IMG/VR virus record: IMGVR_UViG_3300027759_000046
Coordinates: 189,138-253,137 of that record
DNA: 64,000 nt
Strand: one strand, 5' to 3'
Position numbers and translations under genes: made by a program
Notes under the pieces: generated by a model
Databases searched by the model: none
Told to the model about the DNA's origin: nothing
The model's input: only the letters and a program-made list of their open reading frames with translations
In this document: in pieces, positions 19,798 to 60,369 of the stretch
Layout: every line of letters begins with the position of its first letter
Numbering within the stretch: the first letter of the stretch is position 1

Positions 19798-20389
19798 TGT
19801 GTTTTTGTATTGTTTGTTTAATCCAGTCAAAATTAACTGGAGTATAATCGGTCAAGCATGCGCATACTGAATAGGCATTCTTGATTGGATGCAAAACTTG
19901 GTGTGAGTGACCATATAGGTGATATGATCCGTGAAATTTTCCATTGAATTCCAAGATTGGATAGTGGAACAGCACAACTCGACGAAAACCGATTTTCTGT
20001 TCTGGGTCCGGAAAGAAGATCTCTTCGTAATCTTTAAAGTCAACGATTTTTGCAACTGAACTAAGTTCCCTGAACCAGTGCTCATCGATATGAGTATCGT
20101 GATTGCCTTTTAACCAAACTATATTACCCTTTAACTGGCTAAAAATCCATTTTAGATAACTTAATTTAATTCGGTGCATTGAGGCATCTCCTAGGAAGAA
20201 AACAGTATCATCCTCCTGTACAACAGAATTCCAACGAGCAATGATCTCATTATCGTGCTCCTCAATTGATTGGAAATTATGCAAACCTTCTTCAAATCGC
20301 AATACGTTATTGTGATCAAAGTGGGGATCGCTTATGAACCAGGTTTTTGCTGGATCGAATATTTTGTTCTGTGGTATTTGTCCGCTCAT
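19748..20389 (-). CDS. calcineurin-like metallophosphoesterase
   Basis: SDPH, LGD, GNHD, HYP and GHSH motifs. Confidence 0.92.
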   Translation of the reverse strand: MSGQIPQNKIFDPAKTWFISDPHFDHNNVLRFEEGLHNFQSIEEHDNEIIARWNSVVQEDDTVFFLGDASMHRIKLSYLKWIFSQLKGNIVWLKGNHDTHIDEHWFRELSSVAKIVDFKDYEEIFFPDPEQKIGFRRVVLFHYPILEFNGKFHGSYHLYGHSHQVLHPIKNAYSVCACLTDYTPVNFDWIKQTIQKHNEGLNRLGESGVQPTN

Positions 20390-21450
20390 GTTAGTTTTGT
20401 ACTAACATACCCAAAAGCGGTTTCGGCGTCACTCATTACCTTAGATCTTTGTTGAAAAGCTAGATCAGTTTGAGCCTTATCGTATTTAGACGAAGATGTG
20501 TGCTTGTCTATTTTTGTTTTATAAATCTTGACAACTTCCTGTAGGAATTCTTGAGAGTTCTGGTATTTAGATTTAGGAAGATTGAATGTTCCGTTTTGCT
20601 CCAATGTTCTAGCAAACCCCAAGATTCCATTGCAAATCTGCTCAAGGCTTAAGTCAGTCACGTCAATTCCAGGATGTTGCTCCAAGTACTGATCAAGCTG
20701 GACTGCTCTCTTCTCTCCACGAGTAAATTCGTCTGTGAATTCAGCAAGATGGGCCAAGAACCTGTTAAAATCTCGGGTAACAATTCTCTCTTCAACGTCC
20801 TTGCGAAATGCTGGGCTGACTAGCTCACCCGCCTTAATCTTGGCAACAACGCCACGATCAGTTACCGAAACTCCGAGCGCATTACCGAATGATTGATATA
20901 AGAAACCTACAACAAATCCTTTAATACCTCTAATTGGCGTGTAGCGGGCTTTTGCCCAATCGGCCGAGTAAGTGAATGTTGGAATAACATCGACTTGCAC
21001 AGGACCATCAGTTAAATTTATGACCAGTTTGAGGTTGCCTTCAGAGATGGCTTCAGTTTCTTCAGTATCTAGATCAGGTCGAGTTGATTCAGCCGACCAT
21101 TGTAAAAAGAGGCTATTATATTTTTTAAGAGTATCAATCTCAACTCGACGACCTTGAGGTTCATCAAGTGGATACATTACAAGAATATCAACATCACCGT
21201 ATGCCTTTTCAGGATTCTCTTCAAGATCCTTTTTAAAATAGACGCCTGAGCCACCTGGTCCAACTACTTTTACTGGAGCAAGACCATGTGCCTGGGCCCA
21301 TTGATTAAAATCTGCAAAGATATTTTCCAGAACCTCAATTGCCTCCTGTAAAACAGCTGGAGTTATCTTGGTTCCTTGAGTTTTGGTTGTTGCCCAGCCT
21401 CCCATTTCATTTATTTGTAAAAAGTCCGTAAATGATTTAATATTCTTCAA
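20386..21450 (-). CDS. Pol-beta-superfamily nucleotidyltransferase, leader-tagged
   Basis: GGSG...YGDVDILV...VQVD; the TTG start gives MKNIKSFTDFLQINE. Confidence 0.75.
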   Translation of the reverse strand: MKNIKSFTDFLQINEMGGWATTKTQGTKITPAVLQEAIEVLENIFADFNQWAQAHGLAPVKVVGPGGSGVYFKKDLEENPEKAYGDVDILVMYPLDEPQGRRVEIDTLKKYNSLFLQWSAESTRPDLDTEETEAISEGNLKLVINLTDGPVQVDVIPTFTYSADWAKARYTPIRGIKGFVVGFLYQSFGNALGVSVTDRGVVAKIKAGELVSPAFRKDVEERIVTRDFNRFLAHLAEFTDEFTRGEKRAVQLDQYLEQHPGIDVTDLSLEQICNGILGFARTLEQNGTFNLPKSKYQNSQEFLQEVVKIYKTKIDKHTSSSKYDKAQTDLAFQQRSKVMSDAETAFGYVSTKLT

Positions 21451-21474
21451 AACTTGTGATGTTCTTTTAGATAT

Positions 21475-22278
21475 TTATCGCTGAACTTCCGGCACCCAGT
21501 GAGTTGTGCGCCCGTCTAGAGTCTCTTCACGAACTACAGTATTTCCTTTGGGATCGAGCTTTTGTGCATAGACTTCAAATTCAAACACGAATTCTCCTTT
21601 TTCTCCGCCCAGCCTCTGGTAATTTCTGATACTGGCTCCACCTTGTGCGTATGAAGTTTTCATGATTTTCTGAATCCAGTTAAAGAGAACAGCTGTTTCA
21701 ACTTGATCAATATCTCTGACCAATCTATGCGGCGAAATGCCTGCTCGATAAAGCACTTCGCATTTAATATAATTACCTACGCCTGCGCACACTCTCTGAT
21801 CCATCAGCACCTCAACTATTGTCTTGTTAGGATACTTATTGATTGCTGAATTGAATTTAACTAGGGTGAACTCTGTATCATTGAGAGCATCTCCACCTAG
21901 ACTCGCTAATTTCTTGGTGAGCTCAGCTCTATCGTGAGAAAATTTAAGTGTACCGAACCTGCGTTGATCTACAAAATAGAGTGACCTGGTGTCATCGATA
22001 CCAATACCAAAGTGCGCGTGCTTATCTGGGTCAGTTGACCAGTAACCGCTCATACCCAATGTAATCCACACGGTTGCACCAGTTTCAAGCTCAAGCCACA
22101 TGAATTTACCCTTGACTCCTCCGCCGACTACTCGGCTTGGCAAGGACACCTCATCAATCCCAAGTGGTCTTTTTTTAAGAAATCTACCACTAAATACTTG
22201 TAACTGTGTTACTTGTGAATCTCCGATCTCTTTTCTGAGATCTTCATACACCCTTCTAACTTCTGGTCCTTCCGGCAT
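21475..22278 (-). CDS. mutM: formamidopyrimidine-DNA glycosylase (Fpg/Nei family)
   Basis: MPEGPEV N-terminus, LGMSG, DQRRFG and GVGNYIKCEVL; zincless-finger C-terminus. Confidence 0.92.
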   Translation of the reverse strand: MPEGPEVRRVYEDLRKEIGDSQVTQLQVFSGRFLKKRPLGIDEVSLPSRVVGGGVKGKFMWLELETGATVWITLGMSGYWSTDPDKHAHFGIGIDDTRSLYFVDQRRFGTLKFSHDRAELTKKLASLGGDALNDTEFTLVKFNSAINKYPNKTIVEVLMDQRVCAGVGNYIKCEVLYRAGISPHRLVRDIDQVETAVLFNWIQKIMKTSYAQGGASIRNYQRLGGEKGEFVFEFEVYAQKLDPKGNTVVREETLDGRTTHWVPEVQR

Positions 22279-22314
22279 AAGATAAATAATTTAGTAAAAA
22301 TATACTTATTAACG

Positions 22315-23781
22315 ATGGCTACAGCAACAGCATTTGCATATAACACAGGATCACCAATTGACGGGACCGACCAGGTCGGATCTCTCGCGGTCGGAATCCC
22401 AACATACGGTTTTGAATCAACTGGCCTTGAGTGGTGGGGCGGTCCCGATCAAGAATTGGGAATAGTGGTTGCAAAACCTGTTCCAAGCGAAAAACAACCG
22501 ACTCCAGTTGGAGAAAATCTTTATTTAGACGGCACACGTAAGGGAGTTGACATTGCATTGACTGGATCACCATCTCAGGTCGCTCATCAAAACTTTGGAT
22601 ATCAACAGTCTGTATTGGGAACAATCGGTATTGACTCTATTGATAAGGTAATGTTTAGCGTTTTAGTTCAGTTAGATACACCGGGCGTTCAGACAAATTC
22701 TCACTTTATTGGAGTTGGTAAAGCATCAATGAACTATCAGGGCAATCCATACCGTGGCTATCCAGGAAATGATAATGCGAGCTATGGATATTGCAGTGAC
22801 GGTAGTACATACGGAGGCGGCAGTGTTGATGTTTCGCAGTTAGCAACTTGGGGAAATGGTGATATTGTTGATATTGCGATTGATCGCTCAATAGATGCAA
22901 TGTGGGTTAGAGTAAACGGCGGCGATTGGAATAATGATCCGTCTGCTGACCCAAATAATCCAAGCGGTGGTCTGTCCGTACCGTTTGACGCAATATGTTA
23001 TCCAGTATTATGTCCAGGATACGACGGTACGATGACTATTCAGGCAAACCCGGCGTATGGAACACCAAATAATTTTAAATTTCTAGGAAGCGGTGAAACT
23101 GCATCAGTTGCATTTAGCCGAACCTCAAACAATCCTTCAACTAAAGAAGACGAATTTATCAGCATCGCATACGCTCTGCTCTATGGTCCAGGCGATATTG
23201 GCGCAAATCCTCCGTTTGCAGACGGTGCTGAAGCATCCGCTGCACTAACCGCTGCAGGATATTGGAATAGTTATTCTAGCTTCGGCAGCTCAGGATTCCA
23301 ATGGATGACAATGACAAGTATCGCTGACTCATCGGCTTCCGGTATTGGACAAAATAATATTACTGTTTCGATTACTCAAGGAGGTGGCGGTATGCAAACC
23401 GAGAATGGTATGTACCAAGCTGCAACATTCCCAGAAGAATATGGAGTTCCACTAAGCGGTAATCAAATCCGAAACACCAAAGCTGGTGTATTTACAGCAA
23501 CATTTAGCCAGCCCGTTCTGAATCCGCTAGTTGCATTTGCAAGCGTTGGTAATCCTGGATTACCAGTCCCAGTTCAATCAACTTTACCATTCACACCAAT
23601 TTTTGGTCAGGCTACAACATATCAAAACGAATGTAGTCCAACTCAATACACTCAATTTACCGGACGAGAAGGATTTAATATTATTCGAATAGATGGTACA
23701 GTCAGTAGCGTAACTTTTACGTATACTGTCGAGGAATTCTATTGCACCGTTTGTTTTGGATTCGTTGATCAAAATGCATAA
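22315..23781 (+). CDS. SPRY/B30.2-domain beta-rich virion or adhesin-like protein
   Basis: GDIVDIAID...WVRVNG.W SPRY signature; GATAAATAA at 22281. Confidence 0.7.
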   Translation: MATATAFAYNTGSPIDGTDQVGSLAVGIPTYGFESTGLEWWGGPDQELGIVVAKPVPSEKQPTPVGENLYLDGTRKGVDIALTGSPSQVAHQNFGYQQSVLGTIGIDSIDKVMFSVLVQLDTPGVQTNSHFIGVGKASMNYQGNPYRGYPGNDNASYGYCSDGSTYGGGSVDVSQLATWGNGDIVDIAIDRSIDAMWVRVNGGDWNNDPSADPNNPSGGLSVPFDAICYPVLCPGYDGTMTIQANPAYGTPNNFKFLGSGETASVAFSRTSNNPSTKEDEFISIAYALLYGPGDIGANPPFADGAEASAALTAAGYWNSYSSFGSSGFQWMTMTSIADSSASGIGQNNITVSITQGGGGMQTENGMYQAATFPEEYGVPLSGNQIRNTKAGVFTATFSQPVLNPLVAFASVGNPGLPVPVQSTLPFTPIFGQATTYQNECSPTQYTQFTGREGFNIIRIDGTVSSVTFTYTVEEFYCTVCFGFVDQNA

Positions 23782-23848
23782 TTTTAAAAAAAGCACAAGT
23801 TTATACCCAAAGTATAAAAATAGGATTAAAAATAAATTATAAATCTAC

Positions 23849-24328: not shown

Positions 24329-24331
24329 TCT

Positions 24332-24903: not shown

Positions 24904-24904
24904 G

Positions 24905-28694: not shown

Positions 28695-29993
28695 TTAAAA
28701 TTCTCTTTGTGTTTCGTATACTGTTTTAATAACTGGAAATCTTAATGAGTGGTTTCCGTGTTGATCAGTCGTTTCTTCAAAAAACTGAACCGTAATTGTT
28801 TTACCTAAAATTTCATTTGGGTTTTGAAAGTAGTGGCGACGTTGTTCAAGAGAAAAACCTGATCCAACTCTGACTTGATTGCCTTTATGCTGAACGAATA
28901 CTGCTTTCAGCATTTCCTCTTCTTCTTCACGGCCGTTTTCAATAACTCGGTGAGTTCCGTTTTCAAGACCAGTTACTTGATACTCAGCATCATGCATCTT
29001 TTTAACCTTTAACAGGTTCTTTGAGCGTTTGCCTTCGTATCCAACATCCTTACGAATCATGATGCCTTCGTATCCCATTTCAGTTGCATCAGCTGCAACC
29101 TTTTCAAAATGTTCTCGATCAGTTAATTTGAATTGAGGCAATGGCTCTGCGAATTCCAGTCCAGTACTCGATGCCACCAAGTAAGCATTTATCATGACTA
29201 ACCTAGCAGATAGAGTTATTTCGCTTGTTCCGCTTGTAAATTCGTCAAGATCCAATAGGTCAAATACATAATACTTTGGAGTTTCAATAGTGTGGTCCTT
29301 TTTGCCTATTTCTTTGATAATCCCCTGAAAATCTTCAAGGCCAGAATCTCGCATGATACAAACTTCGCCATCTAGAACTTTAGACCTAAGACCCAATTTC
29401 ATAAGGTCTTGGCGTAAAGCATCGAGAGTTAAGAACTCCTTGCCTTGACGAGAAAAGAACTTAATATCACCAGCTTCATCAATTACGGTGATGCAACGAA
29501 CTCCGTCTAGCTTACGACTTGCCCACCACATACCTGAATCAAAATCTACTTTCTTCTCAGCCGATTCAAATTTTTCAGCTAATGCAACTTCAAAGGTCGG
29601 CACTGTCCCAGGCAGGACAGAATTGATTAAGGTAGAGGTTGCTCGGGTTTTAATATTGCGATCTATCACATCATAGATGATGTCTGCGAACTCCTTATAT
29701 TTTGCGATAAAACCATTAACTGCTTGTATTGCATTGTGGCCAGTCACATGACGTTCATTCAGATCATCAAGCATCGCAAACAGATCAGTATAATTATCGA
29801 AAATTAGGTCAGATCTCTTTTTGAGATTTGCTGAAGTAACATGATACTGCTTAAATGGCGTGTACGTGTACTTAAATATTTTTCGTAGGAATGGAGAATC
29901 GTATTTTTGCAGAATCTCTTTTTTGGCATTAGTCGAAGAAGTAGCTTTCATCTCTTCAATAAACTCCCTAAGGTTGGTAAAGTCTGTATGCAT
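28695..29993 (-). CDS. ATP-dependent DNA ligase
   Basis: KLDGVR, LDGE, EGIMIR, LLKVK, VGSGF and SLRFP. Confidence 0.95.
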   Translation of the reverse strand: MHTDFTNLREFIEEMKATSSTNAKKEILQKYDSPFLRKIFKYTYTPFKQYHVTSANLKKRSDLIFDNYTDLFAMLDDLNERHVTGHNAIQAVNGFIAKYKEFADIIYDVIDRNIKTRATSTLINSVLPGTVPTFEVALAEKFESAEKKVDFDSGMWWASRKLDGVRCITVIDEAGDIKFFSRQGKEFLTLDALRQDLMKLGLRSKVLDGEVCIMRDSGLEDFQGIIKEIGKKDHTIETPKYYVFDLLDLDEFTSGTSEITLSARLVMINAYLVASSTGLEFAEPLPQFKLTDREHFEKVAADATEMGYEGIMIRKDVGYEGKRSKNLLKVKKMHDAEYQVTGLENGTHRVIENGREEEEEMLKAVFVQHKGNQVRVGSGFSLEQRRHYFQNPNEILGKTITVQFFEETTDQHGNHSLRFPVIKTVYETQREF

Positions 29994-30064: not shown

Positions 30065-31603
30065 TTATCTTCTAACCTTTAGGAAGTCAGAGAATGAAGT
30101 AATCACAGTAGCTTCAGAAACTGCGGTAAATCCTCCTTGTTGACCGCCTTGTTGACCGCCTTGAACAGGAGTCTTTTGCATGTCTTGGGAAATCTTATCA
30201 ACTTGTTGAGCAAGAGGTCCTCCACCTGTAATACCGGCCCAATAGCCGTTACATAGAGAAAGCATGTCTCCGCTTATTTCAGAAGCAACGCAGTACTCGT
30301 AAAAGTCTCCGTCTTCTCCAAAATTCTTAGACCATACTTGTTTAACAACTGCTGCTGTTTGTGGGCTAAGTGAAGTGATCATGAAGGTGATTTGTAATTC
30401 GTCAGCTCCGTCAGTATAACCTTTTGCTAATTCTCTAATTTGAGTACAGAATGCAAATGCTGCATCTTCAGCTGTGAAGTTTTGAGCTTGAACTGGTTCT
30501 GCACCGCTTGCTGCGGCTGAGAGAGCTCCGCCTGTTGCCATTCCGGCACCAACTCCTGCTCCGATTTTTCCACCGACTTGAGCAGCTTTGCCTGCTTGAG
30601 TTAAGGTTGAGAAACCTGATTGAGCTGCTCTAAAGTCATTTGCACCAGCTGCCAGTCTTGAAACGTTTGCCGCTCCTTGAACTCCAACACCAGTTGCTTC
30701 AGCTCCAGTTGTTGCCATTGCACCGCTTCTAAATGCTGTGAAACCTCCTCTTAATTTATTAACGGCTCCAGCTGCTCTAACCGCTCTAGCTCCAGTAATA
30801 AGGCCTTTTGCCGCGGCTCCTACACCGAATGTACAAAGCCCAATCGCAACGTCTACTACCAATGATTCTAGAAAATCTACTCCCATTCCGGTCGCAATAT
30901 CTTGTTCAGTAACGGTATCACCGTAAACTGCTCTAGCTAAAACTTCAGGAGTTCCAGAGAAATCTCCTTTAACCGCATCCATTAGGGACTCATTATATGC
31001 TGTCTGATATGCAGTACCTAATGCTTTGAATATTTCTGGCACGTTTGCACCTTTTTCGTAACCAATACGATAGATTGCTCCAGCTAATGCACCAAGCTTG
31101 TCTTCGTCTGTTCCAAAATTTAATCCGAAAATTGAACTTCCTTCAACACCCTTTCTAAATTGAGTTGCTAAGTAATTCATATCTAAACCTTCGATTACCT
31201 TAGACGTTGAATCCCAATCAATATAAACTCCAGATTTTCCAGACGCGGTTTTACCGCCAGCTACATAGATTGAAACTGCGTATTCTTGGTCTCCGATTTT
31301 TACGGTAACTCGACCTGGACCAGATTGGCCAGACGCTACTAAGTTTGCAGACTCAGCGTTAAGCTTTAAGAATTCTGCGTCCGCTTTATCGCCTTTGCTA
31401 GCATTATCAATAATTAATTTCTTGATTGCCTGAACTTCCGGAGAATCAGTTGGTTCAATTGAAATGGTATTACCTTCAGGTTTTGCACCAGGCGAACCGG
31501 CTGTGCCAGCGGTACCAGCTGAACCGGCTTCAGTTAGCGAATAGTAGCCCAAAGACTTGCTCTCGTTTAATATTGCGTAATTTCCTATGTTTATGTGTCT
31601 CAT
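30065..31603 (-). CDS. putative virion protein with annexin-like repeats and Gly/Ala-rich membrane segments
   Basis: FGTDEDKL..AVKGDFSG and GYTDGADE..VASEISG; hydrophobic VAIGLCTFGVGAAA; LNE leader and GSAGTAG repeat. Confidence 0.55.
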   Translation of the reverse strand: MRHINIGNYAILNESKSLGYYSLTEAGSAGTAGTAGSPGAKPEGNTISIEPTDSPEVQAIKKLIIDNASKGDKADAEFLKLNAESANLVASGQSGPGRVTVKIGDQEYAVSIYVAGGKTASGKSGVYIDWDSTSKVIEGLDMNYLATQFRKGVEGSSIFGLNFGTDEDKLGALAGAIYRIGYEKGANVPEIFKALGTAYQTAYNESLMDAVKGDFSGTPEVLARAVYGDTVTEQDIATGMGVDFLESLVVDVAIGLCTFGVGAAAKGLITGARAVRAAGAVNKLRGGFTAFRSGAMATTGAEATGVGVQGAANVSRLAAGANDFRAAQSGFSTLTQAGKAAQVGGKIGAGVGAGMATGGALSAAASGAEPVQAQNFTAEDAAFAFCTQIRELAKGYTDGADELQITFMITSLSPQTAAVVKQVWSKNFGEDGDFYEYCVASEISGDMLSLCNGYWAGITGGGPLAQQVDKISQDMQKTPVQGGQQGGQQGGFTAVSEATVITSFSDFLKVRR

Positions 31604-31625: not shown

Positions 31626-32834
31626 TTATTTCTTTTCTTCGGTTCCTTCTGCTGGAGCGGTTGCCGTCTGTACTGCAACTGGAGCAGTTGCTCCTCCAGG
31701 TTTATTGATATAGATGAAACCTGCTTGACCAGCTGTTCCGCTTGTTCCGCCAGTACCACCAGTACCACCAGTACCAGACGTTCCGCCAGTAGTTACAACT
31801 GGGTTAGTTCCTTTACCTGCAAGTTCCCAAAGCTCTTTTAATCGAGCTAGAGTTATTCCAACTTTTGTGCAGTATTTAGCAAGATATTCAACATCATTTG
31901 AGTTGACCGCATTATGTTCAGCTTCTTTTGCATCAAAGAACATTCCAAAGGCAGTTGCTGTGTTTGGACCGTAATTACCGTCCGGATTGCCTAATTTATC
32001 TTGAACCCTTTTTCCAGCCTCGCCGTATTTCTCAGCAAGAACTTTTTCTTTAAGGATTAGTTGAACGAATTTTACCTCTTGTCCCTTTGACCCTCTAGAA
32101 ACTTTAATTCCGGTTTGAAGAGCTCTACCGTTAGGATTTGGGTCTTGCTTATTACTAACAATCTCAAATGCAAGAAGTTTCTCAGTTAAGTATTTTAAAA
32201 TTTGATCGTCCGCAGCGGTGTCTTTCCAATCCCATGGAAATACTCCGCCAGTACCGCCTGTTCCAGAAGAACCGGCTGATCCAGCTGTACCGGTCGTACC
32301 TGCTGTTCCAGAAGAACCACTTGTTCCAGTTTCAACTTTAATAATCTCTGGTTTAACTACTGGATTTAGGTCGGAATTCATTTTGGTAGCGTCCTCGGCT
32401 TTGTATAATTTAAGTTTACCATTTGAACTAGTTAAGAAAGGCTGCGCTTTTGATACGTCGTATTTGGAAGCATCTCTAACAGATAAGATTCCCTTAAAGA
32501 TTTGTTGGCCTGTTGCTGAACGCTCTTTGTCTTTAGTAACTGCAATGAATACGATATTATTTGCGACCTTTGACATTACTACTGCGCTCGCTGATAATTG
32601 ATCAGCTGCATTCTTTTTAGCCTCATCTGGATTCTCAGTTTCCATTTTCATAACGAAATGAAATGCAGCGATTTCGCCAGCATTAGCGTCCGGCTTATCT
32701 TCGTCAACTTTGAATTTTTGATCAGGGGTTAAAAATGAGAGTAGTGCTTCGTTTAGAGGCATTGTGCCCTTGGTTCCAGTTGACTTAGTATAGCTTTCGT
32801 TAATAAAGTCGTCAAATGATTTAAAACTTTTCAT
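31626..32834 (-). CDS. putative virion protein with GT/SG repeats and peptidoglycan-binding domain
   Basis: MKSFKSFDDFINE; RGSKGQEVKFVQ...DGNYGPNTATA; GTSGSSGTAG tracts. Confidence 0.65.
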   Translation of the reverse strand: MKSFKSFDDFINESYTKSTGTKGTMPLNEALLSFLTPDQKFKVDEDKPDANAGEIAAFHFVMKMETENPDEAKKNAADQLSASAVVMSKVANNIVFIAVTKDKERSATGQQIFKGILSVRDASKYDVSKAQPFLTSSNGKLKLYKAEDATKMNSDLNPVVKPEIIKVETGTSGSSGTAGTTGTAGSAGSSGTGGTGGVFPWDWKDTAADDQILKYLTEKLLAFEIVSNKQDPNPNGRALQTGIKVSRGSKGQEVKFVQLILKEKVLAEKYGEAGKRVQDKLGNPDGNYGPNTATAFGMFFDAKEAEHNAVNSNDVEYLAKYCTKVGITLARLKELWELAGKGTNPVVTTGGTSGTGGTGGTGGTSGTAGQAGFIYINKPGGATAPVAVQTATAPAEGTEEKK

Positions 32835-32946: not shown

Positions 32947-34071
32947 ATGAAATACTTATTTGAATTTGCTCAATACTCTGCACAACCTGCTCATACTGCA
33001 TCTTTTGGTGTGCTCGGTGATCTGGGTAAAAAGTCTAAATTTGGAGAACAGACTGGATATTTTAAGAGCCTGATGGAAGAAGCTCAAGCTGGAGGCATGG
33101 ATGCCTTTGTGTTTACAGAGTTTTCACCAGAAGGAGTGACTGCTTGGAGCCTGGACGGAGATGACTGGCATGAATCAAAAAAGGCTTTACCTTCTGTATT
33201 TTACGATAGAAGTTTCAGAAAGAAAGACGGTGCTGGTAAAACTTCAAATACTCGAGCTCTATGCTCGATGGGTTGCACTCCATTAAACTCACCAGAGTTT
33301 AGAAAGCTCGCGCTAGACAAGCATTTAATGTATCAAAATTTAGCAGATCATTCAATTGACGGAATGGGCTTACCTCATACTGAGAAGTACAGCGATTCAA
33401 AATTGATTCCATTCTTGCAAAAACATCCATCAGCTATTCTTAAACCTAGATTTGGTTCAGGTGGGCATGGCATAATCAAACTTTCTAAATCGGATTCAGG
33501 TTATGGAATCAATTATAAGGAAAATTCAATAGAGTGCCAGGAACCAGAATTGCTAAATAAACTTAATGAAATTCGTCAAAAGATGAATGCTAGCAAGAGA
33601 CTCTATATTATTCAAGAGTGCATTGACTTGCCTAAATACAATAATGGAGTATTTGACGTTCGCGTAATTTATCAAAAGGGCAAGGGCGGAAGTCCTCTAC
33701 GTACAGGTATGGCTGTAAGGCTTGCTGCACCAAATAAGGTTACAGCAAATCTACACCAAGGCGGAAGTCGAGAAACTCTAGGAAATGTATTGGGAACCTT
33801 GTTTAATCAAGACATGAATGGAGAAATTGCTGAATCGATTAGAAATTACTCAAAGGAGATTTTTGAGATATTAGACAGTAAAGTCGGGCCAATTGGAGAA
33901 GTCGGTATAGATTTCCTAATTGATCAAGGAGGTAGAGTTCATCTAATTGAGGTCAACTCTGTCCCAGGTAGAAACCTATTTCATATCTTACCGGATATTA
34001 GAGAGACTGCTATTAAAAGACCAGTCGAATACGCTAAGCACTTACTAGATAAACAAAAAAAGCCGCAATAA
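32947..34071 (+). CDS. YheC/YheD-like ATP-grasp protein
   Basis: YDR, DKH, LKPRFGSGGHGI, YIIQE, FDVR, ANLHQGG, GIDF and IEVNSVPG. Confidence 0.9.
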   Translation: MKYLFEFAQYSAQPAHTASFGVLGDLGKKSKFGEQTGYFKSLMEEAQAGGMDAFVFTEFSPEGVTAWSLDGDDWHESKKALPSVFYDRSFRKKDGAGKTSNTRALCSMGCTPLNSPEFRKLALDKHLMYQNLADHSIDGMGLPHTEKYSDSKLIPFLQKHPSAILKPRFGSGGHGIIKLSKSDSGYGINYKENSIECQEPELLNKLNEIRQKMNASKRLYIIQECIDLPKYNNGVFDVRVIYQKGKGGSPLRTGMAVRLAAPNKVTANLHQGGSRETLGNVLGTLFNQDMNGEIAESIRNYSKEIFEILDSKVGPIGEVGIDFLIDQGGRVHLIEVNSVPGRNLFHILPDIRETAIKRPVEYAKHLLDKQKKPQ

Positions 34072-55630: not shown

Positions 55631-56364
55631 ATCAGTGAGTTAACGTCATCTGAAAAATCTTCTGGAGATTCTTCAGGCTTTATTACATCGGTGAGTCCAC
55701 GTTCGTTCATTACTTCAGTTTTTCTACCGGGGTGGGTTAAGTGTCGAGAGTCCTCTTCATCTTCAACCTCTTCAGCCGTTATCTCTTTAATTAAATTTTT
55801 TGTTCCTGCTGTGATGTAGTAATCGCTAGTTGAGGCAAGTAACGGAGTTACTGAACCAGATCCACCAGACGACTTTTGTTCAATATCACTATGCATCTTT
55901 TTATAAGTATCTTCCAGGAATAAGATATAGTTTGCTTGAGTTTTAATAACTGTTGTCAGCTTATCTTGTAATTGACCAAATACCTCAAATAGACGAGGGT
56001 GGGCATTACCTTGATTAATCTCCTCGGCAATTTTTTCAATTGCCATTCGAATCGTCTTTAACTGAAAGAAAATATTTTGGATATTTGTATTATCTAGATT
56101 CTGTTTTTGACGTAAGTAATCATGTTTGTCTAGAACACCTAGATCAACATAGAACTTTAACATTGATCCAGTAATATCCTTTGCCTGTTTTTCAAATTGA
56201 GAGTTCATCTCAACGAAATCTAACGGCGGGGCTGCTGCGATTTCTCCAAGCTGCTCGTCAACGATATCGTCTTCTCCATTTGGACCTGTTGAGTAACCTC
56301 GTAGGAGATCCTCTAACTCACTTTTGATTTGAGCTTTCTTTTGCTTATCGAATACTTGACTCAT
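55627..56364 (-). CDS. terminase small subunit (T4 gp16-like)
   Basis: HPRLFEVFGQL resembles the gp16-family HPRAYEV motif; immediately upstream of the large subunit. Confidence 0.7.
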   Translation of the reverse strand: MSQVFDKQKKAQIKSELEDLLRGYSTGPNGEDDIVDEQLGEIAAAPPLDFVEMNSQFEKQAKDITGSMLKFYVDLGVLDKHDYLRQKQNLDNTNIQNIFFQLKTIRMAIEKIAEEINQGNAHPRLFEVFGQLQDKLTTVIKTQANYILFLEDTYKKMHSDIEQKSSGGSGSVTPLLASTSDYYITAGTKNLIKEITAEEVEDEEDSRHLTHPGRKTEVMNERGLTDVIKPEESPEDFSDDVNSLI

Positions 56365-56370
56365 ATAATA

Positions 56371-56616
56371 TTAGTTTATGCGGTTTTCGTTTTTATCTAG
56401 TGCAGGATTAGCAAATATTTTGATCTGCTTAACTGCTTCAATGTGTTCGTAAATGTAGGTTTCAAGATAGCTCATGAAGCCGTCTAGTATTGGATTTGCA
56501 CCAAACATTTGGTTAGACAAAGTCTTCTTTAGAATTGAGTCTTTGTACTTAAAACCCAGATGCAGGCGTTTGTCCTTGCGATTGTATATTGTCCAGTAGA
56601 GAGAATTTCTTATCAT
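56371..56616 (-). CDS. hypothetical protein
   Basis: 81-aa ORF between the baseplate gene and terminase. Confidence 0.55.
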   Translation of the reverse strand: MIRNSLYWTIYNRKDKRLHLGFKYKDSILKKTLSNQMFGANPILDGFMSYLETYIYEHIEAVKQIKIFANPALDKNENRIN

Positions 56617-58301
56617 TATACGATTCCTAATTTTTTACGAACTACTTTCTGTGATTTAATTTCAATATTTAGTGCACCTAACGAGCCGTCAGATAGTCCA
56701 GTTTGATATGCATTACCGTTTCGATCGGACCAACCTCCTCTGATTACTGGGAATTCGGCTGATTTAATTATAATATCATTAAATTCGTCTAGTCCAACTC
56801 TATCAGTTTCACGTCTATTCGGCCTTTCCGTAAAAGCAACCTCATTCAGTTCAGATAGTATTGTGATGCTCACTGAGTCAACACCATTTACCTCCTCAAC
56901 TATTTTAATTAGATCACTCTTTGGAACACGGTCGTTTCGGTTAAGTTTAATAAAGTAGTTGCCGACTGCGTCTGAAATATCTGACTTAATAATATCATTT
57001 GAAACATCGTCAAATGCAATAACGCTGATGTTTAGCACGTATTTAGTAATAACTGGATCCAGCAAATTAATTTCACTTGAAATCATTTTTGTTCCAGAGC
57101 GTTCAATGTATTTTAGAAGCTCATTTTTTTGAAATTGAGTTAACGTGAATTTGGATAGAGCCAAGTTAAAATAGTCAGTTCCGGTTTTAAACATTTGCGA
57201 AACGTCTGGCACAAGAAATAAGTTAATCATTCTTGCGTCTAACTCATCTAGGAAAACTCTAATGGTTGAGAACATCTGCATTTTGTGAAGTAGAACTTCG
57301 TAATTATCAACGTTAACTAATGCAAAATTCTTTGATGCTTTTGGCGCGATTAATCGAGTTAAGGCAATCTCTTCAGGATCAACACCAAAACTTGGTGGAC
57401 TTACTGTGTAAATATCAAAATATTCATTAAGGTTTATCTCTTCTCCGATTGGAGAAAATGCAGTCTCAGCGAAAGTAAAGAATACTTGACTTGGATTATC
57501 AATTATGATATTTCCGCCAGCACCCTCTGATACTAAGTATTCAACAACGATTTCAGAACCGGCTGCTGGAATTTTACCAAATGAACCGTTTCCAAAATAG
57601 ATGTCTAATCCATTAGTTATCCCGGTTTTAGCAATGAAACCTTTTCCGCCGCGAGGCATGTCTAACATTGACTCGTATTTGGTCCATTGTTCTCCATTGA
57701 CATACACCTTAACCTTAAAATTATCGATGTAGTAATTATTTGGAAAACCTAACTGGTAACTCTCAAGAGCTTGGCCCTTTCCAGTAAAAGTTTGGGTCTC
57801 AATTTGACCTTGTCGCAGGCTAAAAACTGTTGGGGGTTCATTGCCTGTCAAGTTTAATCGGATTTCATCTTGCGGTAATTCAATAACGTAGGTTAGGCCG
57901 TTATTATCGCAAGTTACCTTGAACAGATCGTTTAATAGGGCTTTATTAACGGGTGGAGTTATTCCAGGTTTTCTAACTACTCTGATCTGGGCAGTTGCGC
58001 CAATTGCACGGCTTGGATTGTGGCCTGCTAAACTTGCTAATGAATAGATTGAAGATGGTCGAGTTGCCTCATTGATATTCAACTCAGTAATTGAGTCTTC
58101 AATATAATAAAATATTAATTGGCTTAAGTTTTCAAAAACAATCAACAACTGACCAAATGGCGAAGCTGCCGTAAAGATGGTCTTTGCCTGCTTGAAACGA
58201 TTCTGCAAGAATGTGATTGATTCTCCCAAGATATCGTTTATTCGGATCTTTAGGCTCGTGAAGAGTCTAAGTGATGTATTTTGACTTGATAGGTTTGCCA
58301 T
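56616..58301 (-). CDS. baseplate wedge subunit (T4 gp6-like)
   Basis: SIYSLASLAGHNP, IYFGNGSFGKIP..G..IVVEYLVSEGAGGN and ALVNVDNY. Confidence 0.88.
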   Translation of the reverse strand: MANLSSQNTSLRLFTSLKIRINDILGESITFLQNRFKQAKTIFTAASPFGQLLIVFENLSQLIFYYIEDSITELNINEATRPSSIYSLASLAGHNPSRAIGATAQIRVVRKPGITPPVNKALLNDLFKVTCDNNGLTYVIELPQDEIRLNLTGNEPPTVFSLRQGQIETQTFTGKGQALESYQLGFPNNYYIDNFKVKVYVNGEQWTKYESMLDMPRGGKGFIAKTGITNGLDIYFGNGSFGKIPAAGSEIVVEYLVSEGAGGNIIIDNPSQVFFTFAETAFSPIGEEINLNEYFDIYTVSPPSFGVDPEEIALTRLIAPKASKNFALVNVDNYEVLLHKMQMFSTIRVFLDELDARMINLFLVPDVSQMFKTGTDYFNLALSKFTLTQFQKNELLKYIERSGTKMISSEINLLDPVITKYVLNISVIAFDDVSNDIIKSDISDAVGNYFIKLNRNDRVPKSDLIKIVEEVNGVDSVSITILSELNEVAFTERPNRRETDRVGLDEFNDIIIKSAEFPVIRGGWSDRNGNAYQTGLSDGSLGALNIEIKSQKVVRKKLGIV

Positions 58302-58401
58302 CGGTAACGGACTTCTTTTTGATTATTTATCAGCCCAATCTTTTCTTTGCAAAACCATGACCTTGGATAAATACTTTTAGTATAATACTTTTATACTACA
58401 T

Positions 58402-58770
58402 GGGGGTGCTTGGATTTGACGCGGATGGTTCAAGTATGCTCGCACGCCGAGGATGATGCTAAGACTCGCTAAAACGTATCAAAACGATAAGTGGAAACAC
58501 TAACTTCTGGAGCCTAGTTAACGCTGGCGTTAGCACTCCGGTTACTGAAGAGCTTTTAGCTGCATAAGTAACCAAGCGGCAACTGCTTGACCGAACCAAA
58601 GTTGCAAAACCAGCATGGCGTAGCGGCCAAGTCTAACCGTTACCGACTTTTAGCTCTAAGTCGTTAAAGAATGAGATAGTTGGTCCAGTTAGAAAATGGG
58701 ACTAAGCGTGTGAACGAGAGTTTACTCGAAAATCTTGCGGACACGGGTTCGACTCCCGTCACCTCCACCA
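58402..58770 (+). ncRNA. ssrA: tmRNA
   Basis: 5' GGGGGTG pairs with 3' CACCTCC-ACCA with a G3:U wobble; GGATTTGAC 5' motif; T-arm CGGGTTCGACTCCCG; tag ORF 58493-58567 GNTNFWSLVNAGVSTPVTEELLAA*. Confidence 0.96.
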
Positions 58771-58777
58771 TGTCTTA

Positions 58778-58802
58778 AAGGCTTCCATTACGGAAGCCTT
58801 TT
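58778..58802 (+). terminator. intrinsic terminator after tmRNA
   Basis: AAAGGCTTCC-ATTAC-GGAAGCCTTTT. Confidence 0.85.
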
Positions 58803-58834
58803 CTTTTTAGACAGCCTGATTGATAAATAAGAGT

Positions 58835-59587
58835 ATGAAGGCACTTAACACCGACGATATTTTTTTAAGGAATTTAACAATAGCTCTACTTGATCTCCTG
58901 AATGGATCAATGACACTTTCTCTGTCTAGAGACGATCATAAAGAGACATTCTCTGTTCCATTTCTCTATAATTTTGGAACTGATGAGGGTTTCTTAAAGG
59001 ATTTTTATATTGGACTCCCAGACAACTGTCAAATCCCAGTAGCCGAAGGCACTTACGATATTATTCCAAGAGGAATTGTTACCCTAGGATCATTTCAGGT
59101 AAAATCATCAGATATTACAAATCGATTCATTCGTGGACAGTACTCCGAATTGGAACGCGGACCAAACGATCAAAACGTTTTAACTGGATATTCTGCTCAA
59201 CTCTATTCTCTACCAATGTCAGTTAAGTTTGACGTAAAGATTATTTGCGATAACTTAAATAAAGCATTCAAGATTGCTGAGAGAATGTTAGACATTAATT
59301 ACGCAAATCGTGTAATGTATTTTCAATACAATGGAGTTCGTATTCCGGCTCAATTCCAGTTTCCAACAAATGAAACGGTTGACAAGGTTTACAAATTTAC
59401 AATGAATGAAAATAACAAGATCAATGTGAGTCTTTCAATTGATGTTGAGACCTATTTCCCAAGCTTTGAGCAGAGTTCTAAGAGGCTTAGCACAAATGTT
59501 ATGGAAAGAGTTAATATCAATAAAAAGGACGATACTGGAAATAATATGACAAGCAGTTGGGTTGATCAAAATACACCTATCATTTAA
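58835..59587 (+). CDS. tail terminator/sheath stabiliser (T4 gp15-like)
   Basis: VPFLY, IPRG and PMSVKFDVKIICDNLNKAFKIAERM pattern; GATAAATAA at 58822. Confidence 0.7.
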   Translation: MKALNTDDIFLRNLTIALLDLLNGSMTLSLSRDDHKETFSVPFLYNFGTDEGFLKDFYIGLPDNCQIPVAEGTYDIIPRGIVTLGSFQVKSSDITNRFIRGQYSELERGPNDQNVLTGYSAQLYSLPMSVKFDVKIICDNLNKAFKIAERMLDINYANRVMYFQYNGVRIPAQFQFPTNETVDKVYKFTMNENNKINVSLSIDVETYFPSFEQSSKRLSTNVMERVNINKKDDTGNNMTSSWVDQNTPII

Positions 59588-60369
59588 TGAAGTACTTATT
59601 AGAATTTAAAACATTTACAATTACTGAAGGCGGTAACGCTTTTCCTGATGCACAAAGCCTTGATCGTGGCGCGGTTGAACCGGCTTTTGCTAAATTCCAA
59701 GATGCAATGTCAAATGTATTTGGCAAAGCTGAACTTGAATTAATTGGTTCATGGAAACAAAAAGAAGTATCTGGTGATCTAGATACTCTATTCTATTCTG
59801 ACTTAACTCTTCCTGAGATCTCAGCAAAAGTTCAAGAAGCAGGATACGAAACCAAGATATTTTATGGATTTAATATTGTGTCCGTTAAATTTGAAATTTC
59901 ACCAGAGCATTTTGTTCAATTTGATATGTTCGTTAGGCCGATGGACACCAACCGTGATGTAAACGATTTGTTCTATAAATCAACTGATGAAGAACGGTAT
60001 TCAACAAAGCATCGTGTCTTTTTGATCTTTTGTGCGCTAGATTCTATGAAGTTTGATAAGATTGAAAAAGACGGTGTGTTAACTCATTTTAAAGGTTATA
60101 TGCTTCGACCTGACGGTCTCTATCAATTCACGAAAGAGATGAAGAAGATTAATTATAAGATTATGGATCGCCAAAAGTTAACCGACGACCTTGATCAAAT
60201 TTCGTTGATCTTATTTGGTAAAGTCTATCCGTATCAACAATGGAATACTTACGAAAAGACTCTCACCTTGCTTGAGAAGAATCCTAAATTAGACATGAAG
60301 ACTATTCTTGACGAATATCGTGCTAAATTGGATGAAGAAGGTCTTGTGGTTCCAGGTGGAATCAGTTAA
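59587..60369 (+). CDS. Pol-beta-superfamily nucleotidyltransferase, leader-tagged
   Basis: MKYLLEFKTFTITEGGN; LIGS..SGDLD..VQFD. Confidence 0.78.
   Translation: MKYLLEFKTFTITEGGNAFPDAQSLDRGAVEPAFAKFQDAMSNVFGKAELELIGSWKQKEVSGDLDTLFYSDLTLPEISAKVQEAGYETKIFYGFNIVSVKFEISPEHFVQFDMFVRPMDTNRDVNDLFYKSTDEERYSTKHRVFLIFCALDSMKFDKIEKDGVLTHFKGYMLRPDGLYQFTKEMKKINYKIMDRQKLTDDLDQISLILFGKVYPYQQWNTYEKTLTLLEKNPKLDMKTILDEYRAKLDEEGLVVPGGIS

What the first reader, a model, noticed from the sequence alone, without database searches (positions are those of the whole stretch)
20386..60369. Two divergent leader-tagged nucleotidyltransferases with E-(M)GG right after the predicted cut
Seen: INE-MGGW (21450-) and ITE-GGNA (59587), each followed by GS...GD[VL]D...[V]Q[VF]D Pol-beta catalytic motifs. 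Established: this fold includes tRNA and protein nucleotidylating enzymes and cyclic-nucleotide synthases. Inference: injected enzymes, possibly activated by maturation cleavage, that modify host RNA or protein or counter nucleotide-signalling defences.
Basis: partly seen in the sequence, partly recalled or inferred. Interest (0 to 1): 0.6.

Follow-up and report, generated by a model that had tools for sequence, protein, structure and literature searches.

The report
Capsid-tagged Pol X-like enzymes in a phage
A 253-kb freshwater T4-like phage encodes two distantly related mini DNA-polymerase-beta-like enzymes that carry the short N-terminal tag T4 uses to load proteins into its head, so they are probably packed with the DNA and delivered to the host as nucleic-acid repair enzymes.

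Summary
Both ORFs exist at the stated coordinates: A is window 20386-21450(-), 354 aa; B is 59587-60369(+), 260 aa. Both carry the stated leaders and an hG[GS]...GDxD...QxD set that is invariant among their relatives.

Both AlphaFold models match family X DNA polymerases over palm plus thumb (Z about 10-11). This includes nearly the whole of the minimal ASFV Pol X. Other nucleotidyltransferases match the palm only. A and B are homologous (hhalign 97%, E 5e-11). They belong to a large, unnamed, phage-only family of about 350 cluster representatives.

The leader is real and portable. About 28 of 334 genes in this genome start with M-K-x-x-x-x-F-x-x-F-[IL]-N-E, which closely resembles the T4 capsid-targeting sequence MKTYQEFIAE. 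The genome also encodes a gp21-type (S77) prohead protease.

The GG belongs to the enzyme, not to the cut site. Leaderless relatives start M-GG.

Context points to strand-break repair. A lies in a conserved Fpg/Nei - A - metallophosphoesterase operon. Relatives are fused to, or lie next to, ligase-like domains and a P-loop kinase.

Packaging, cleavage and activity are inferred, not shown.

The parts
20386..21450 (-). Gene A: 354-aa Pol X-like nucleotidyltransferase with leader. TTG start.
   Evidence: ORF. 63 metagenomic homologues. AF2 pLDDT 88.2. In an unbiased structural search the top 9 hits are all family X polymerases: Pol beta Z 10.7 with 185-205 aa aligned, ASFV Pol X Z 9.8 with 173 of 176 aa.
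21406..21450 (-). Leader of A, MKNIKSFTDFLQINE. The predicted cut is after Glu15 and is followed by M16-G17-G18.
   Evidence: Leader HMM 18.9 bits. The peptide and the TTG start are the same in an 88%-identical relative, with a synonymous change. pLDDT is below 50 for residues 1-4 and 13-18.
20989..21252 (-). Catalytic core of A: G67-S68, D86, D88, D154.
   Evidence: Invariant in alignment A1.
59587..60369 (+). Gene B: 260-aa minimal Pol X-like nucleotidyltransferase with leader.
   Evidence: ORF. AF2 pLDDT 88.0. In an unbiased structural search the top 8 hits are all family X polymerases: Pol beta Z 10.6 with 170 aa aligned, ASFV Pol X Z 9.5 with 159 of 176 aa at rmsd 3.4.
59587..59628 (+). 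Leader of B, MKYLLEFKTFTITE. The predicted cut is after Glu14 and is followed by G15-G16.
   Evidence: Leader HMM 13.8 bits. pLDDT is below 50 for residues 1-15. 79 of 148 family representatives have a leader ending h-x-E directly before GG.
59746..59925 (+). Catalytic core of B: G54-S55, D64, D66, Q111, D113.
   Evidence: Invariant in A2 and in the 74-sequence alignment A3. The family profile aligns GS..SGDxD to Pol beta GSFRRGAESSGDMD, but weakly (E 0.2-0.5).
21475..22278 (-). Fpg/Nei DNA glycosylase/AP lyase, directly upstream of A.
   Evidence: Pfam PF01149, PF06831 and PF21025. It is also directly upstream of A homologues at 88% and 61% identity, and two genes away at 68%.
19748..20389 (-). 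Metallophosphoesterase-like gene, overlapping the end of A by 4 nt.
   Evidence: The five calcineurin-type motifs can be read in the sequence (DPHFDH, GD, GNHD, H, GHSH). There is a weak PdeM hit, E 0.004, below the cut-off. The downstream position is conserved in L013 and L016.
21472..21478 (-). ATAAATA late-promoter-like motif, 28 nt upstream of the start of A.
   Evidence: ATAAATAA is upstream of 14 of 28 leader genes against 42 of 306 other genes (Fisher p 2e-5).
58820..59587 (+). T4 gp15-like tail sheath stabiliser. Its stop overlaps the start of B by 1 nt. ATAAATA lies at 58823-58829.
   Evidence: Pfam PF16724, 25.2 bits. The same gp15-like then B order is found in a 47%-identical relative, beside TerL and a 555-aa gene where this window has its baseplate wedge. 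Sequence.
28695..29993 (-). ATP-dependent DNA ligase, a possible sealing partner.
   Evidence: PHROG 114, E 4e-89. The link to A or B is inferred only.
5578..5985 (+). Another leader-tagged gene (MKHIKQFTQFVNE|N), the top leader-HMM hit.
   Evidence: 24.4 bits.
8265..8864 (+). Another leader-tagged gene (MKTFSQFINE|N). It is the closest to the T4 sequence MKTYQEFIAE.
   Evidence: T4 sequence from PMC8442874.
13682..14056 (+). Leader-tagged peptidoglycan-binding protein.
16216..16842 (-). Leader-tagged CHAP-domain cell-wall hydrolase.
31626..32834 (-). Leader-tagged 402-aa protein of unknown function.
   Evidence: 19.4 bits.

Best explanation
A and B are two divergent but homologous members of an uncharacterised, phage-restricted family of minimal family-X-like (Pol beta palm plus thumb) nucleotidyltransferases with intact two-metal active sites. 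Each is made with a 14-15-residue N-terminal propeptide of the T4 capsid-targeting-sequence type.

The proposed mechanism has four steps.
1. The genes are expressed late. B is co-transcribed with the gp15-like tail gene.
2. The leader docks the protein to the scaffolding core of the prohead.
3. The gp21-type S77 protease cuts after the Glu of I-x-E. This leaves the family's conserved (M)GG N-terminus and a free enzyme inside the head.
4. The enzyme enters the cell with the DNA. There it extends 3'-OH ends at gaps or breaks by one or a few nucleotides so that a ligase can seal them.

For A, the conserved Fpg/Nei - A - metallophosphoesterase operon suggests short-patch base-excision repair of the phage genome. 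Fpg would leave a 1-nt gap with a 3'-phosphate, the phosphoesterase would clean the end, A would fill the gap and a ligase would seal it.

Shown here: the ORFs, the motifs, their conservation, the predicted fold, A-B homology, the leader family, the protease gene, and the gene contexts and fusions. Inferred: packaging, cleavage, delivery, the substrate (DNA or RNA) and the repair role.
For: Fold. AF2 models have pLDDT 88. In searches that do not depend on Foldseek, the top 8-9 hits for both proteins are all family X polymerases, with 160-205 residues aligned over palm plus thumb. ASFV Pol X is covered almost completely. Other NTases align over the palm only, at Z 8.7 or less. The family profile's best PDB sequence hits are all Pol beta, though not significant.

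Active site. The catalytic residues are invariant.

Homology of A and B. hhalign gives 97.1% probability and E 5e-11 over 168 columns.

Leader. It occurs at 19 of 334 N-termini against 0.5 expected. 28 genes score 9 bits or more with the leader HMM. P3 is I, L or V in 25 of 26 leaders, P1 is always Glu and P1' varies. T4 gp21 cuts after L/I-x-E, and the T4 tag MKTYQEFIAE uses residues 4 and 7 for targeting and 8 and 10 for processing (PMC9026906; PMC8442874). Leaders such as MKTFSQFINE match at all four of these positions.

Protease and capsid. An S77 protease lies in a 660-aa ORF beside a gp23-type capsid gene. The capsid protein has ..GSLNE|ST upstream of its first conserved block, much like T4 gp23 ..GSFLTE|AE.

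Other tagged proteins. The leader set includes CHAP, VanY/M15, PG-binding and lysozyme proteins. Enzymes of these kinds are known virion or ejection proteins in other phages (my own knowledge, not tested here).

Timing. A late-promoter-like ATAAATA(A) motif is enriched upstream of leader genes (p 2e-5) and also precedes the capsid protease, several large virion-type genes, A, and the gp15-B pair.

The leader is an add-on. The Atu_ph07 homologue and 8 other representatives start M-GG, and A keeps a Met between Glu and GG.

Repair context. Fpg/Nei lies upstream of A at 100%, 88%, 68% and 61% identity, with UvdE and an RNase_T-like gene (faint Pfam hit) nearby in one relative. Family members are fused to Rnl2-type ligase or DUF6267 domains, and DUF6267 carries a KxDG ligase motif. 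One relative has an operon of a B-type gene, an A-type gene and DUF6267. In another, an A-type gene is followed by a leader-tagged P-loop kinase.

Expression. Lake metatranscriptome contigs cover parts of A, Fpg and the phosphoesterase. One contig from a close relative spans Fpg into A.
Against: There are no virion proteome, cleavage or activity data for this uncultivated phage or any close relative.

Structural Z scores of about 10-11 are only moderately above the background of 7-8. The MSAs used for folding were shallow, at 21 and 25 sequences. No Pfam Pol X model hits A or B.

A tag on about 8-10% of all genes is far more than T4 uses. The tagged set includes a HAD-like protein and apparently ordinary enzymes, so the tag could have another role.

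h-x-E-GG also precedes internal copies of the domain in fusion proteins. This could mean the Glu is part of the domain rather than a cut site.

Fpg itself has no leader, so a complete BER set would not be packaged. The Fpg link is lost in the 35%-identical relatives.

A has a TTG start with no clear ribosome-binding site.

RNA-library contigs cannot prove transcription.
Confidence: 0.5

Rival explanations
1. The enzymes are cytoplasmic repair polymerases and are not packaged. The shared N-terminal peptide would then be something other than a capsid tag. It could be a common helix for assembly into a replication or repair complex, a stability element, or a translation-initiation feature. A and B would act on replicating phage DNA in the cell.
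For: A sits in a DNA-repair operon whose other members lack the leader. About 28 or more genes carry the tag, including a HAD-like protein. h-x-E-GG also occurs inside fusion proteins. A conserves a Met right after the Glu, so a leaderless form could be made from an internal start.
Against: The peptide matches the T4 capsid-targeting sequence at the four positions shown to matter, and it ends in the gp21 motif. An S77 protease is present. Conservation is at the amino-acid level, with synonymous and conservative changes. Cell-wall hydrolases carry the tag. The late-promoter-like motif is enriched upstream of tagged genes. B lies in the structural module, and that position is conserved.
Confidence: 0.22
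2. The enzymes are RNA-end repair nucleotidyltransferases that work like RlaP. They would restore one or two nucleotides at the 3' ends of tRNAs cut by host anticodon nucleases so that a phage RNA ligase can reseal them. This would be a counter-defence function, with or without packaging.
For: Family members are repeatedly fused to or adjacent to Rnl2-type RNA_ligase or DUF6267 domains and to a polynucleotide-kinase-like P-loop kinase. The genome has three PF09414 ligase-like genes. RlaP enzymes add 1-2 NMPs to damaged RNA (bioRxiv 10.64898/2025.12.29.696909). Jumbo phages commonly pair such NTases with RNA ligases (PMC7824862).
Against: Neither A nor B, nor any part of the genome, matches PF10127. 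RlaP has a helical C-terminal domain, whereas A and B have a Pol X-like thumb. In this genome A lies next to a DNA glycosylase and not next to an RNA ligase. PF09414-type domains do not distinguish DNA ligases from RNA ligases.
Confidence: 0.2
3. The enzymes are injected effectors that nucleotidylate host proteins or RNAs, or that make or intercept cyclic-nucleotide signals to block defences such as CBASS.
For: The proteins have a Pol-beta superfamily palm with an intact active site. A capsid-type leader suggests early delivery.
Against: CD-NTases, OAS/cGAS, MenT and aminoglycoside NTases align over the palm only, at Z 6-8.5. No defence or signalling genes are adjacent. The conserved partners are repair enzymes and ligases.
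Confidence: 0.06
4. The proteins are catalytically dead and were recruited as structural or scaffold components of the head.
For: None specific, other than the leader.
Against: The GS loop and all three carboxylates are invariant across hundreds of diverged relatives.
Confidence: 0.02

Closest known systems
African swine fever virus Pol X and other family X DNA polymerases (Pol beta, lambda, mu, TdT, bacterial PolX)
   Same: A and B have the predicted palm plus thumb architecture. 159-173 of the 176 residues of ASFV Pol X align (Z 9.5-9.8), and Pol beta aligns over residues 142-335 (Z 10.6-10.9). They share the GS loop, a DxD on the next strand and a third Asp in a Q/R-x-D strand. Like ASFV Pol X, they lack the 8-kDa lyase domain. 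A lies beside BER-type genes.
   Different: There is no significant sequence similarity and no hit to the Pfam Pol X palm or thumb models. A and B have extra C-terminal helical regions. They have a conserved N-terminal GG-x-A motif that has no described counterpart. They carry a cleavable-looking capsid leader. Polymerase activity is untested.
[quoted passage not shown]
   Same: The N-terminal peptide of about 10-15 residues has aromatic residues three apart followed by I/L-x-E. It is a portable tag on unrelated proteins, and a gp21-type protease is encoded.
   Different: The cargo here is enzymes (Pol X-like NTases, cell-wall hydrolases and others) rather than small basic proteins. About 28 or more genes carry the tag, against a handful in T4. 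The leaders of A and B are 4-5 residues longer. Targeting and cleavage are not demonstrated.
RlaP (PF10127), the RNA-ligase-associating Pol-beta nucleotidyltransferases, including T4 NrdC.11
   Same: Both are Pol-beta superfamily enzymes of phages. At family level both are linked to ligases by fusion and neighbourhood.
   Different: There is no PF10127 match. The C-terminal domain differs: helical in RlaP, Pol X-like thumb here. In this genome neither gene is next to an RNA ligase.
Ejection (E) proteins of giant phages phiKZ, 201phi2-1 and SPN3US
   Same: Many different head-internal proteins are processed after Glu by a gp21-related protease and delivered to the host (PMC9026906).
   Different: In those phages the motif is S/A-x-E, the propeptides are longer and no common short N-terminal tag is described. 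No Pol X-like cargo came up in the papers searched.

Membership tests
Pol-beta-like nucleotidyltransferase superfamily | hG[GS] loop followed by a Dx[DE] strand | tested here: met
   A has G67-S68 ... D86-V-D88. B has G54-S55 ... D64-L-D66. All are invariant.
Pol-beta-like nucleotidyltransferase superfamily | Third catalytic carboxylate on a later beta strand, and the minimal NTase alpha-beta fold | tested here: met
   D154 in A and D113 in B are invariant. Both models align to many NTase palms at Z 6-9.
Family X DNA polymerases | Palm followed by the Pol X thumb (nascent base-pair binding) subdomain | tested here: met
   Predicted models only. The top 8-9 hits of an unbiased search are all Pol X, with 160-205 residues aligned over both subdomains.
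Family X DNA polymerases | Recognition by the family's sequence models (Pfam DNA_pol_B_palm and DNA_pol_B_thumb) | tested here: not met
   A and B have no Pfam hit at E up to 1. One fused relative gives DNA_pol_B_palm at E 0.025. The profile against PDB gives Pol beta first, but at E 0.2-0.5.
Family X DNA polymerases | 8-kDa dRP-lyase domain and helix-hairpin-helix fingers subdomain | tested here: not met
   The folded part of B starts at the palm, with alignments beginning at model residue 17-26. In A only the low-confidence leader helix overlays Pol beta residues 91-141. ASFV Pol X lacks these domains too.
Family X DNA polymerases | Template-directed or terminal (d)NMP addition to a primer 3'-OH | not testable with these tools
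   This needs enzyme assays.
T4-type capsid-targeting-sequence (CTS) proteins | N-terminal peptide with aromatic or hydrophobic residues at the T4 positions 4 and 7, ending in L/I-x-E | tested here: met
   The general leader of this genome matches exactly (for example MKTFSQFINE). A and B match with 1-2 extra residues before I-x-E (T4 data).
T4-type capsid-targeting-sequence (CTS) proteins | A gp21-type (S77) prohead protease in the same genome | tested here: met
   PF03420 scores 33-35 bits, above the cut-off, at G000:C1:64429-66411.
T4-type capsid-targeting-sequence (CTS) proteins | Presence in the virion with the leader removed | not testable with these tools
   The phage is uncultivated and no proteome is available.
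RlaP (PF10127) | Match to the PF10127 model | tested here: not met
   A and B give no hit, and neither does any part of the genome, while control genomes do.
RlaP (PF10127) | NTase domain plus C-terminal helical domain forming the RNA cleft | tested here: not met
   A and B have a beta-rich Pol X-like thumb after the palm. RlaP is described as NTase plus a helical domain.
RlaP (PF10127) | Genomic association with RNA ligases | tested here: inconclusive
   The association is met at family level through fusions and neighbours. It is not met at these two loci.
CD-NTases / cGAS-OAS | NTase core plus the helical C-terminal lobe typical of cGAS/DncV-like enzymes | tested here: not met
   Only the palm aligns well (about 92-128 residues, Z 6-8.4). 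Longer alignments have rmsd of 9-10 A.

The most novel reading that the evidence does not exclude
This freshwater T4-like jumbo phage uses a T4-type capsid-targeting peptide as a general address label on about a tenth of its genes. Through it, the phage loads its head with a nucleic-acid repair kit alongside cell-wall hydrolases. The kit would include two Pol X-like polymerases, a third Pol-beta NTase and, in relatives, ligase-like and kinase enzymes. The prohead protease would also act as an activating step, exposing the conserved Gly-Gly N-terminus of the polymerases. It would cut the same h-x-E|GG junction in multidomain relatives to release the enzyme. The phage genome, which is exposed to sunlight and oxidants in the lake, would then arrive together with its own repair enzymes.
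Probability: 0.3. Interest if true: 0.8.

Novelty: new variant of a known kind. Interest (0 to 1): 0.62.

Why it matters
Three things would follow if this is true.

1. It would define a large, unnamed, phage-only branch of family-X-like polymerases. There are about 350 cluster representatives, with no Pfam or PHROG family and no literature found. It would also link DUF6267 to ligases.
2. It would show that the T4 capsid-targeting mechanism is an ancient and general cargo system, used far outside the T-even phages to deliver enzymes rather than only small inhibitor proteins.
3. It would give a testable example of a virus that packages DNA or RNA repair enzymes with its genome. From memory, something similar has been reported for ASFV particles; this was not checked here. 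It bears on how environmental phages survive UV and oxidative damage and how they counter host nucleases.

The short tag could also be useful for loading proteins into capsids.

Tried and rejected
Searches that gave nothing:
- Pfam, PHROGs and NCBIfam scans of A and B gave no hit.
- tblastn of A and B against 50,697 phage records gave no match, even at E 10 for B.
- BLASTP of A against B gave nothing. The first, narrow profile-profile comparison was weak (22%). Homology appeared only after building a broad 74-sequence profile.
- Profile searches of A1 and A2 against PDB sequences gave nothing.
- PF19782 (DUF6267) and PF10127 (RlaP) were not found in this genome.
- HMM searches for further A or B paralogues in the genome found none. 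A third, unrelated leader-tagged NTase was found by eye and confirmed by Pfam.

Ideas rejected:
- Double-glycine bacteriocin-type leader with cleavage after GG. The other roughly 26 tagged proteins lack GG, leaderless relatives keep GG, and I came across no C39 peptidase (none was searched for).
- DUF6267 as the NTase domain itself. It is a separate domain with a KxDG motif.
- Fpg adjacency as a family-wide rule. It holds down to 61% identity but not in the 35-36% relatives.

Not pursued or not informative:
- I did not follow up the Atu_ph07 virion proteome. Its homologue has no leader, so the result would not bear on the tag.
- The literature searches found no report of CTS-tagged nucleotidyltransferases or of DUF6267.
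- The first protein-atlas call failed because the service was busy. The repeat found only unnamed viral clusters.
- No complex prediction was run. The protease-substrate contact is transient and the leader is too short for that tool.

Full report
SETTING

The window is the last 64 kb of a single 253,137-bp virus record, G000:C1:189138-253137, with a CheckV completeness of 94%. The record is a T4-like jumbo myovirus from lake and freshwater metagenomes.
- It has a T4-type large terminase and baseplate wedge, a gp23-type capsid protein and a gp21-type S77 prohead protease.
- Its nearest terminases are only 30-38% identical. They belong to uncultured huge phages, Sphingomonas phage PAU, Tenacibaculum PTm1 and the Lak phages.
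- No alternative genetic code was needed.

THE OBSERVATION

Both ORFs are as described.
- A is window 20386-21450(-), 354 aa, starting MKNIKSFTDFLQINE-MGGW.
- B is 59587-60369(+), 260 aa, starting MKYLLEFKTFTITE-GGNA.
- The GS / GDxD / QxD residues are invariant in 21 and 25 natural homologues.
- G16, G54, D64, D66, Q111 and D113 stay invariant across 74 far more distant representatives.

All homologues come from metagenomes and are unnamed. Many public gene calls for A start at Met16 (339 aa). This is because the real start is TTG or GTG. In an 88%-identical relative the upstream frame encodes the same leader from the same TTG, with a synonymous change.

WHAT THE PROTEINS ARE

Family scans were blank, so I folded both proteins from their alignments. 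pLDDT was 88.2 and 88.0, and the leaders were disordered.
- Foldseek put family X DNA polymerases first for both.
- VIA-align against 48,161 representative chains does not depend on Foldseek. It gave family X polymerases as the top 8 hits for B and the top 9 for A.
- For A: Pol beta Z 10.7 (185-205 residues aligned), TdT 10.2, Pol lambda 10.2, ASFV Pol X 9.8 (173 of 176 residues), Thermus PolX 9.7.
- For B: Pol beta 10.6 and ASFV Pol X 9.5 (159 of 176 residues, rmsd 3.4).
- Every other nucleotidyltransferase aligned over the palm alone, about 90-128 residues, at Z 8.7 or less. This includes TUTases, GLD-2, OAS, CD-NTases, CCA-adding enzymes, MenT and aminoglycoside NTases.

These Z values are only moderately above the tool's stated background of 7-8. 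The unanimity of the top hits and the two-subdomain coverage are what carry the call.

At sequence level the link is weak. The broad family profile finds Pol beta first in the PDB, aligning GS..SGDxD to GSFRRGAESSGDMD, but at E 0.2-0.5. I therefore call these proteins Pol X-like and not members of the Pol X family.

A and B looked unrelated by BLASTP. A profile of 74 diverse B-type sequences matches the A profile at 97.1% probability and E 5e-11, from the leader through the third Asp and beyond. They are divergent members of one family.

A full HMMER scan of 1.84 billion representatives found 350 relatives at E 0.001 or better. The nearest atlas clusters are viral and carry no family name.

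THE LEADER

The leader is a portable tag.
- A simple pattern hits 19 of 334 gene N-termini, against 0.5 expected from its internal frequency.
- A small HMM finds 28 genes at 9 bits or more, almost all at the N-terminus or at an internal Met that is the likely true start.
- In 26 of these 28 a cut site can be read. P3 is I (14), L (9), V (2) or T (1). P2 is mostly N or T. P1 is always Glu. P1' is variable.

This fits what is published for T4.
- T4 gp21 cuts after L/I-x-E.
- The T4 capsid targeting sequence is the first 10 residues, MKTYQEFIAE.
- In that sequence residues 4 and 7 matter for targeting and residues 8 and 10 for processing (PMC9026906; PMC8442874).
- Leaders here such as MKTFSQFINE and MKSFKQFLNE match at all four of those positions. 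A and B carry one or two extra residues before I-x-E.

Further support:
- The capsid protein has ..GSLNE|ST upstream of its first conserved block, much as T4 gp23 has ..GSFLTE|AE.
- Tagged proteins include CHAP, VanY/M15, peptidoglycan-binding and T4-lysozyme-type enzymes. These are plausible virion cargo.
- A third, unrelated Pol-beta NTase is also tagged (PF01909; G000:C1:157896-158663).
- A T4-late-promoter-like ATAAATA(A) lies upstream of 14 of 28 tagged genes, against 42 of 306 others (p 2e-5). It also precedes the capsid protease and large structural genes, A, and the gp15-like/B pair.

THE GG

The data separate the two.
- GG-x-A is the first conserved motif of the enzyme family.
- Of the best 148 representatives, 79 have a leader ending h-x-E directly before GG, and 8 start M-GG.
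- The structural homologue in Agrobacterium phage Atu_ph07 (TM 0.74; profile E 1.4e-8) also starts MGGRAF.
- A keeps a Met between Glu and GG, as if a leader had been added in front of an older start codon.
- In 19 of 21 multidomain relatives where the domain is internal, it is still preceded by h-x-E-GG.

Cleavage, or Met removal in the leaderless forms, would therefore always give the same Gly-Gly N-terminus. That fits the idea that a free N-terminus matters, and it fits protease release of the domain from polyproteins. It is also what one would see if the Glu were simply part of the domain. AlphaFold places this segment at low confidence, which favours a flexible linker, but the question is open.

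FUNCTION FROM CONTEXT

A lies between an Fpg/Nei glycosylase/lyase (three Pfam domains) and a gene with all five metallophosphoesterase motifs, which has a weak PdeM hit. The spacing is a 24-nt gap and a 4-nt overlap.
- The same order is kept at 88% identity, where UvdE and an RNase_T-like gene (faint Pfam hit) lie nearby.
- It is also kept at 68% and 61% identity.
- It is not kept in the 35-36% relatives.

B directly follows a gp15-like tail gene with a 1-nt overlap. This order is also kept in a 47% relative, next to the terminase and a 555-aa gene where this window has its baseplate wedge.

Across the family:
- The domain is repeatedly fused to Rnl2-type ligase domains or to DUF6267.
- DUF6267 has an H-x-EDL motif and a K-[VW]-DG ligase motif I.
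- One contig has a B-type gene, an A-type gene and DUF6267 in a row.
- Another has an A-type gene followed by a leader-tagged P-loop kinase.
- Atu_ph07 has a KxDG ligase-like neighbour.

This is the signature of end healing and sealing. It is functionally like the RlaP NTases that act with RNA ligases (PMC7824862; bioRxiv 10.64898/2025.12.29.696909). A and B are not RlaP members by model or by architecture.

Whether the substrate is DNA or RNA cannot be settled here. For A the neighbours argue for DNA.

Lake metatranscriptome contigs cover parts of A and both neighbours. One contig from a close relative runs from Fpg into A across the leader. This is compatible with expression but does not prove it.

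VERDICT

It needs correction on enzyme class (Pol X-like) and on likely role (repair, not host modification or cyclic-nucleotide signalling).

Packaging, cleavage, activation and activity are all inferences. My confidence in the full chain is about 0.5. My confidence in the Pol X-like fold and the intact active site is about 0.9. My confidence that the peptide is a T4-type capsid or protease tag is about 0.65.

I found no published description of this family, of DUF6267, or of capsid-tagged polymerases.

LIMITS AND COMPLIANCE
- The fold models rest on shallow alignments.
- Two word-index protein searches and one full representative search were used, because the family scans left both proteins open.

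Noticed in passing
window 58402-58770 (+): A phage-encoded tmRNA lies just upstream of the gp15-like/B operon. ARAGORN gives the tag peptide GNTNFWSLVNAGVSTPVTEELLAA, and Rfam RF00023 scores 113.8 bits over the full model. A terminator-like hairpin follows it.
   Followed up: partly
G000:C1:157896-158663 (-), outside the window: A third leader-tagged Pol-beta nucleotidyltransferase (MRYLNKFTDFINE|S..., TGS...SDLDVHV; PF01909 at 22.7 bits). It is unrelated to A and B and has no GG motif. It heads a run of four consecutive leader-tagged genes at 153652-158663.
   Followed up: partly
whole genome; in the window e.g. 5578-5985, 6054-6710, 8265-8864, 13682-14056, 16216-16842, 31626-32834: About 28 genes, and perhaps 35-40 with weaker matches, begin with the same capsid-targeting-like peptide. 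They often sit in clusters. Several are cell-wall enzymes: PG_binding_1, CHAP, VanY/M15 (14049-15299; its leader scores only 7.4 bits) and Phage_lysozyme at G000:C1:171610-172434.
   Followed up: partly
window 15302-16219 (+) and G000:C1:171610-172434 (-): Just after the leader, both proteins contain G-x-G-T-D-E-E-S-L stretches that look like annexin-type repeats. This was seen in the sequence only.
   Followed up: no
window 1734-2540 (+) and 30065-31603 (-): Two proteins with weaker leader-like N-termini carry collagen-like GTAGSAG repeats. There is a weak Pfam Collagen hit for the first of them only.
   Followed up: no
G000:C1:85209-88160 (-): A 983-aa multidomain protein has an N-terminal Rnl2-type RNA_ligase domain (29.6 bits) and a weak cytidylyltransferase-like (HIGH NTase) region. 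It lies next to a leader-tagged gene. Two further PF09414 ligase-like genes are at 127693-128916 and 131326-132438.
   Followed up: partly
loci L015:2024-3172, and proteins P0220 and P0185: Pfam DUF6267 carries an H-x-EDL motif and a K-[VW]-DG motif like motif I of ATP-dependent ligases. It is fused to, or adjacent to, the A/B-type NTase in either order. It is probably a ligase domain. No literature on it was found.
   Followed up: partly
window 21406-21450 (-): A starts with TTG, and relatives start with TTG or GTG. A Met is conserved right after the predicted cut, so many public gene calls begin there (339 aa). A second, leaderless product from Met16 is conceivable.
   Followed up: partly
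window 17092-18234 (-), 60991-63333 (-), 32947-34071 (+): There is an unusually long (380-aa) thymidylate-synthase-family protein, a 780-aa protein with GT4 and GT9 glycosyltransferase domains, and a YheC/D-type ATP-grasp enzyme. Together they may point to modified DNA or surface glycans.
   Followed up: no
G000:C1:27555-29135 (+) and 66478-67356 (-): GroEL-like and DnaJ-like N-termini were seen among the genome's ORFs. The DnaJ-like gene lies next to the prohead protease gene.
   Followed up: no
locus L009 (Agrobacterium phage Atu_ph07, MF403008: 47215-50592): Four paralogous genes next to the Atu_ph07 homologue begin M-[RK]-[WL]-x-Q-L-x-E. This may be that phage's own version of a cleavable head-targeting leader.
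   Followed up: no
window 19700-22300: Contigs from three lake metatranscriptome libraries cover parts of the phosphoesterase, A and Fpg. One 1.5-kb contig from a roughly 93%-identical relative spans Fpg and the 5' part of A. DNA carry-over cannot be excluded.
   Followed up: partly
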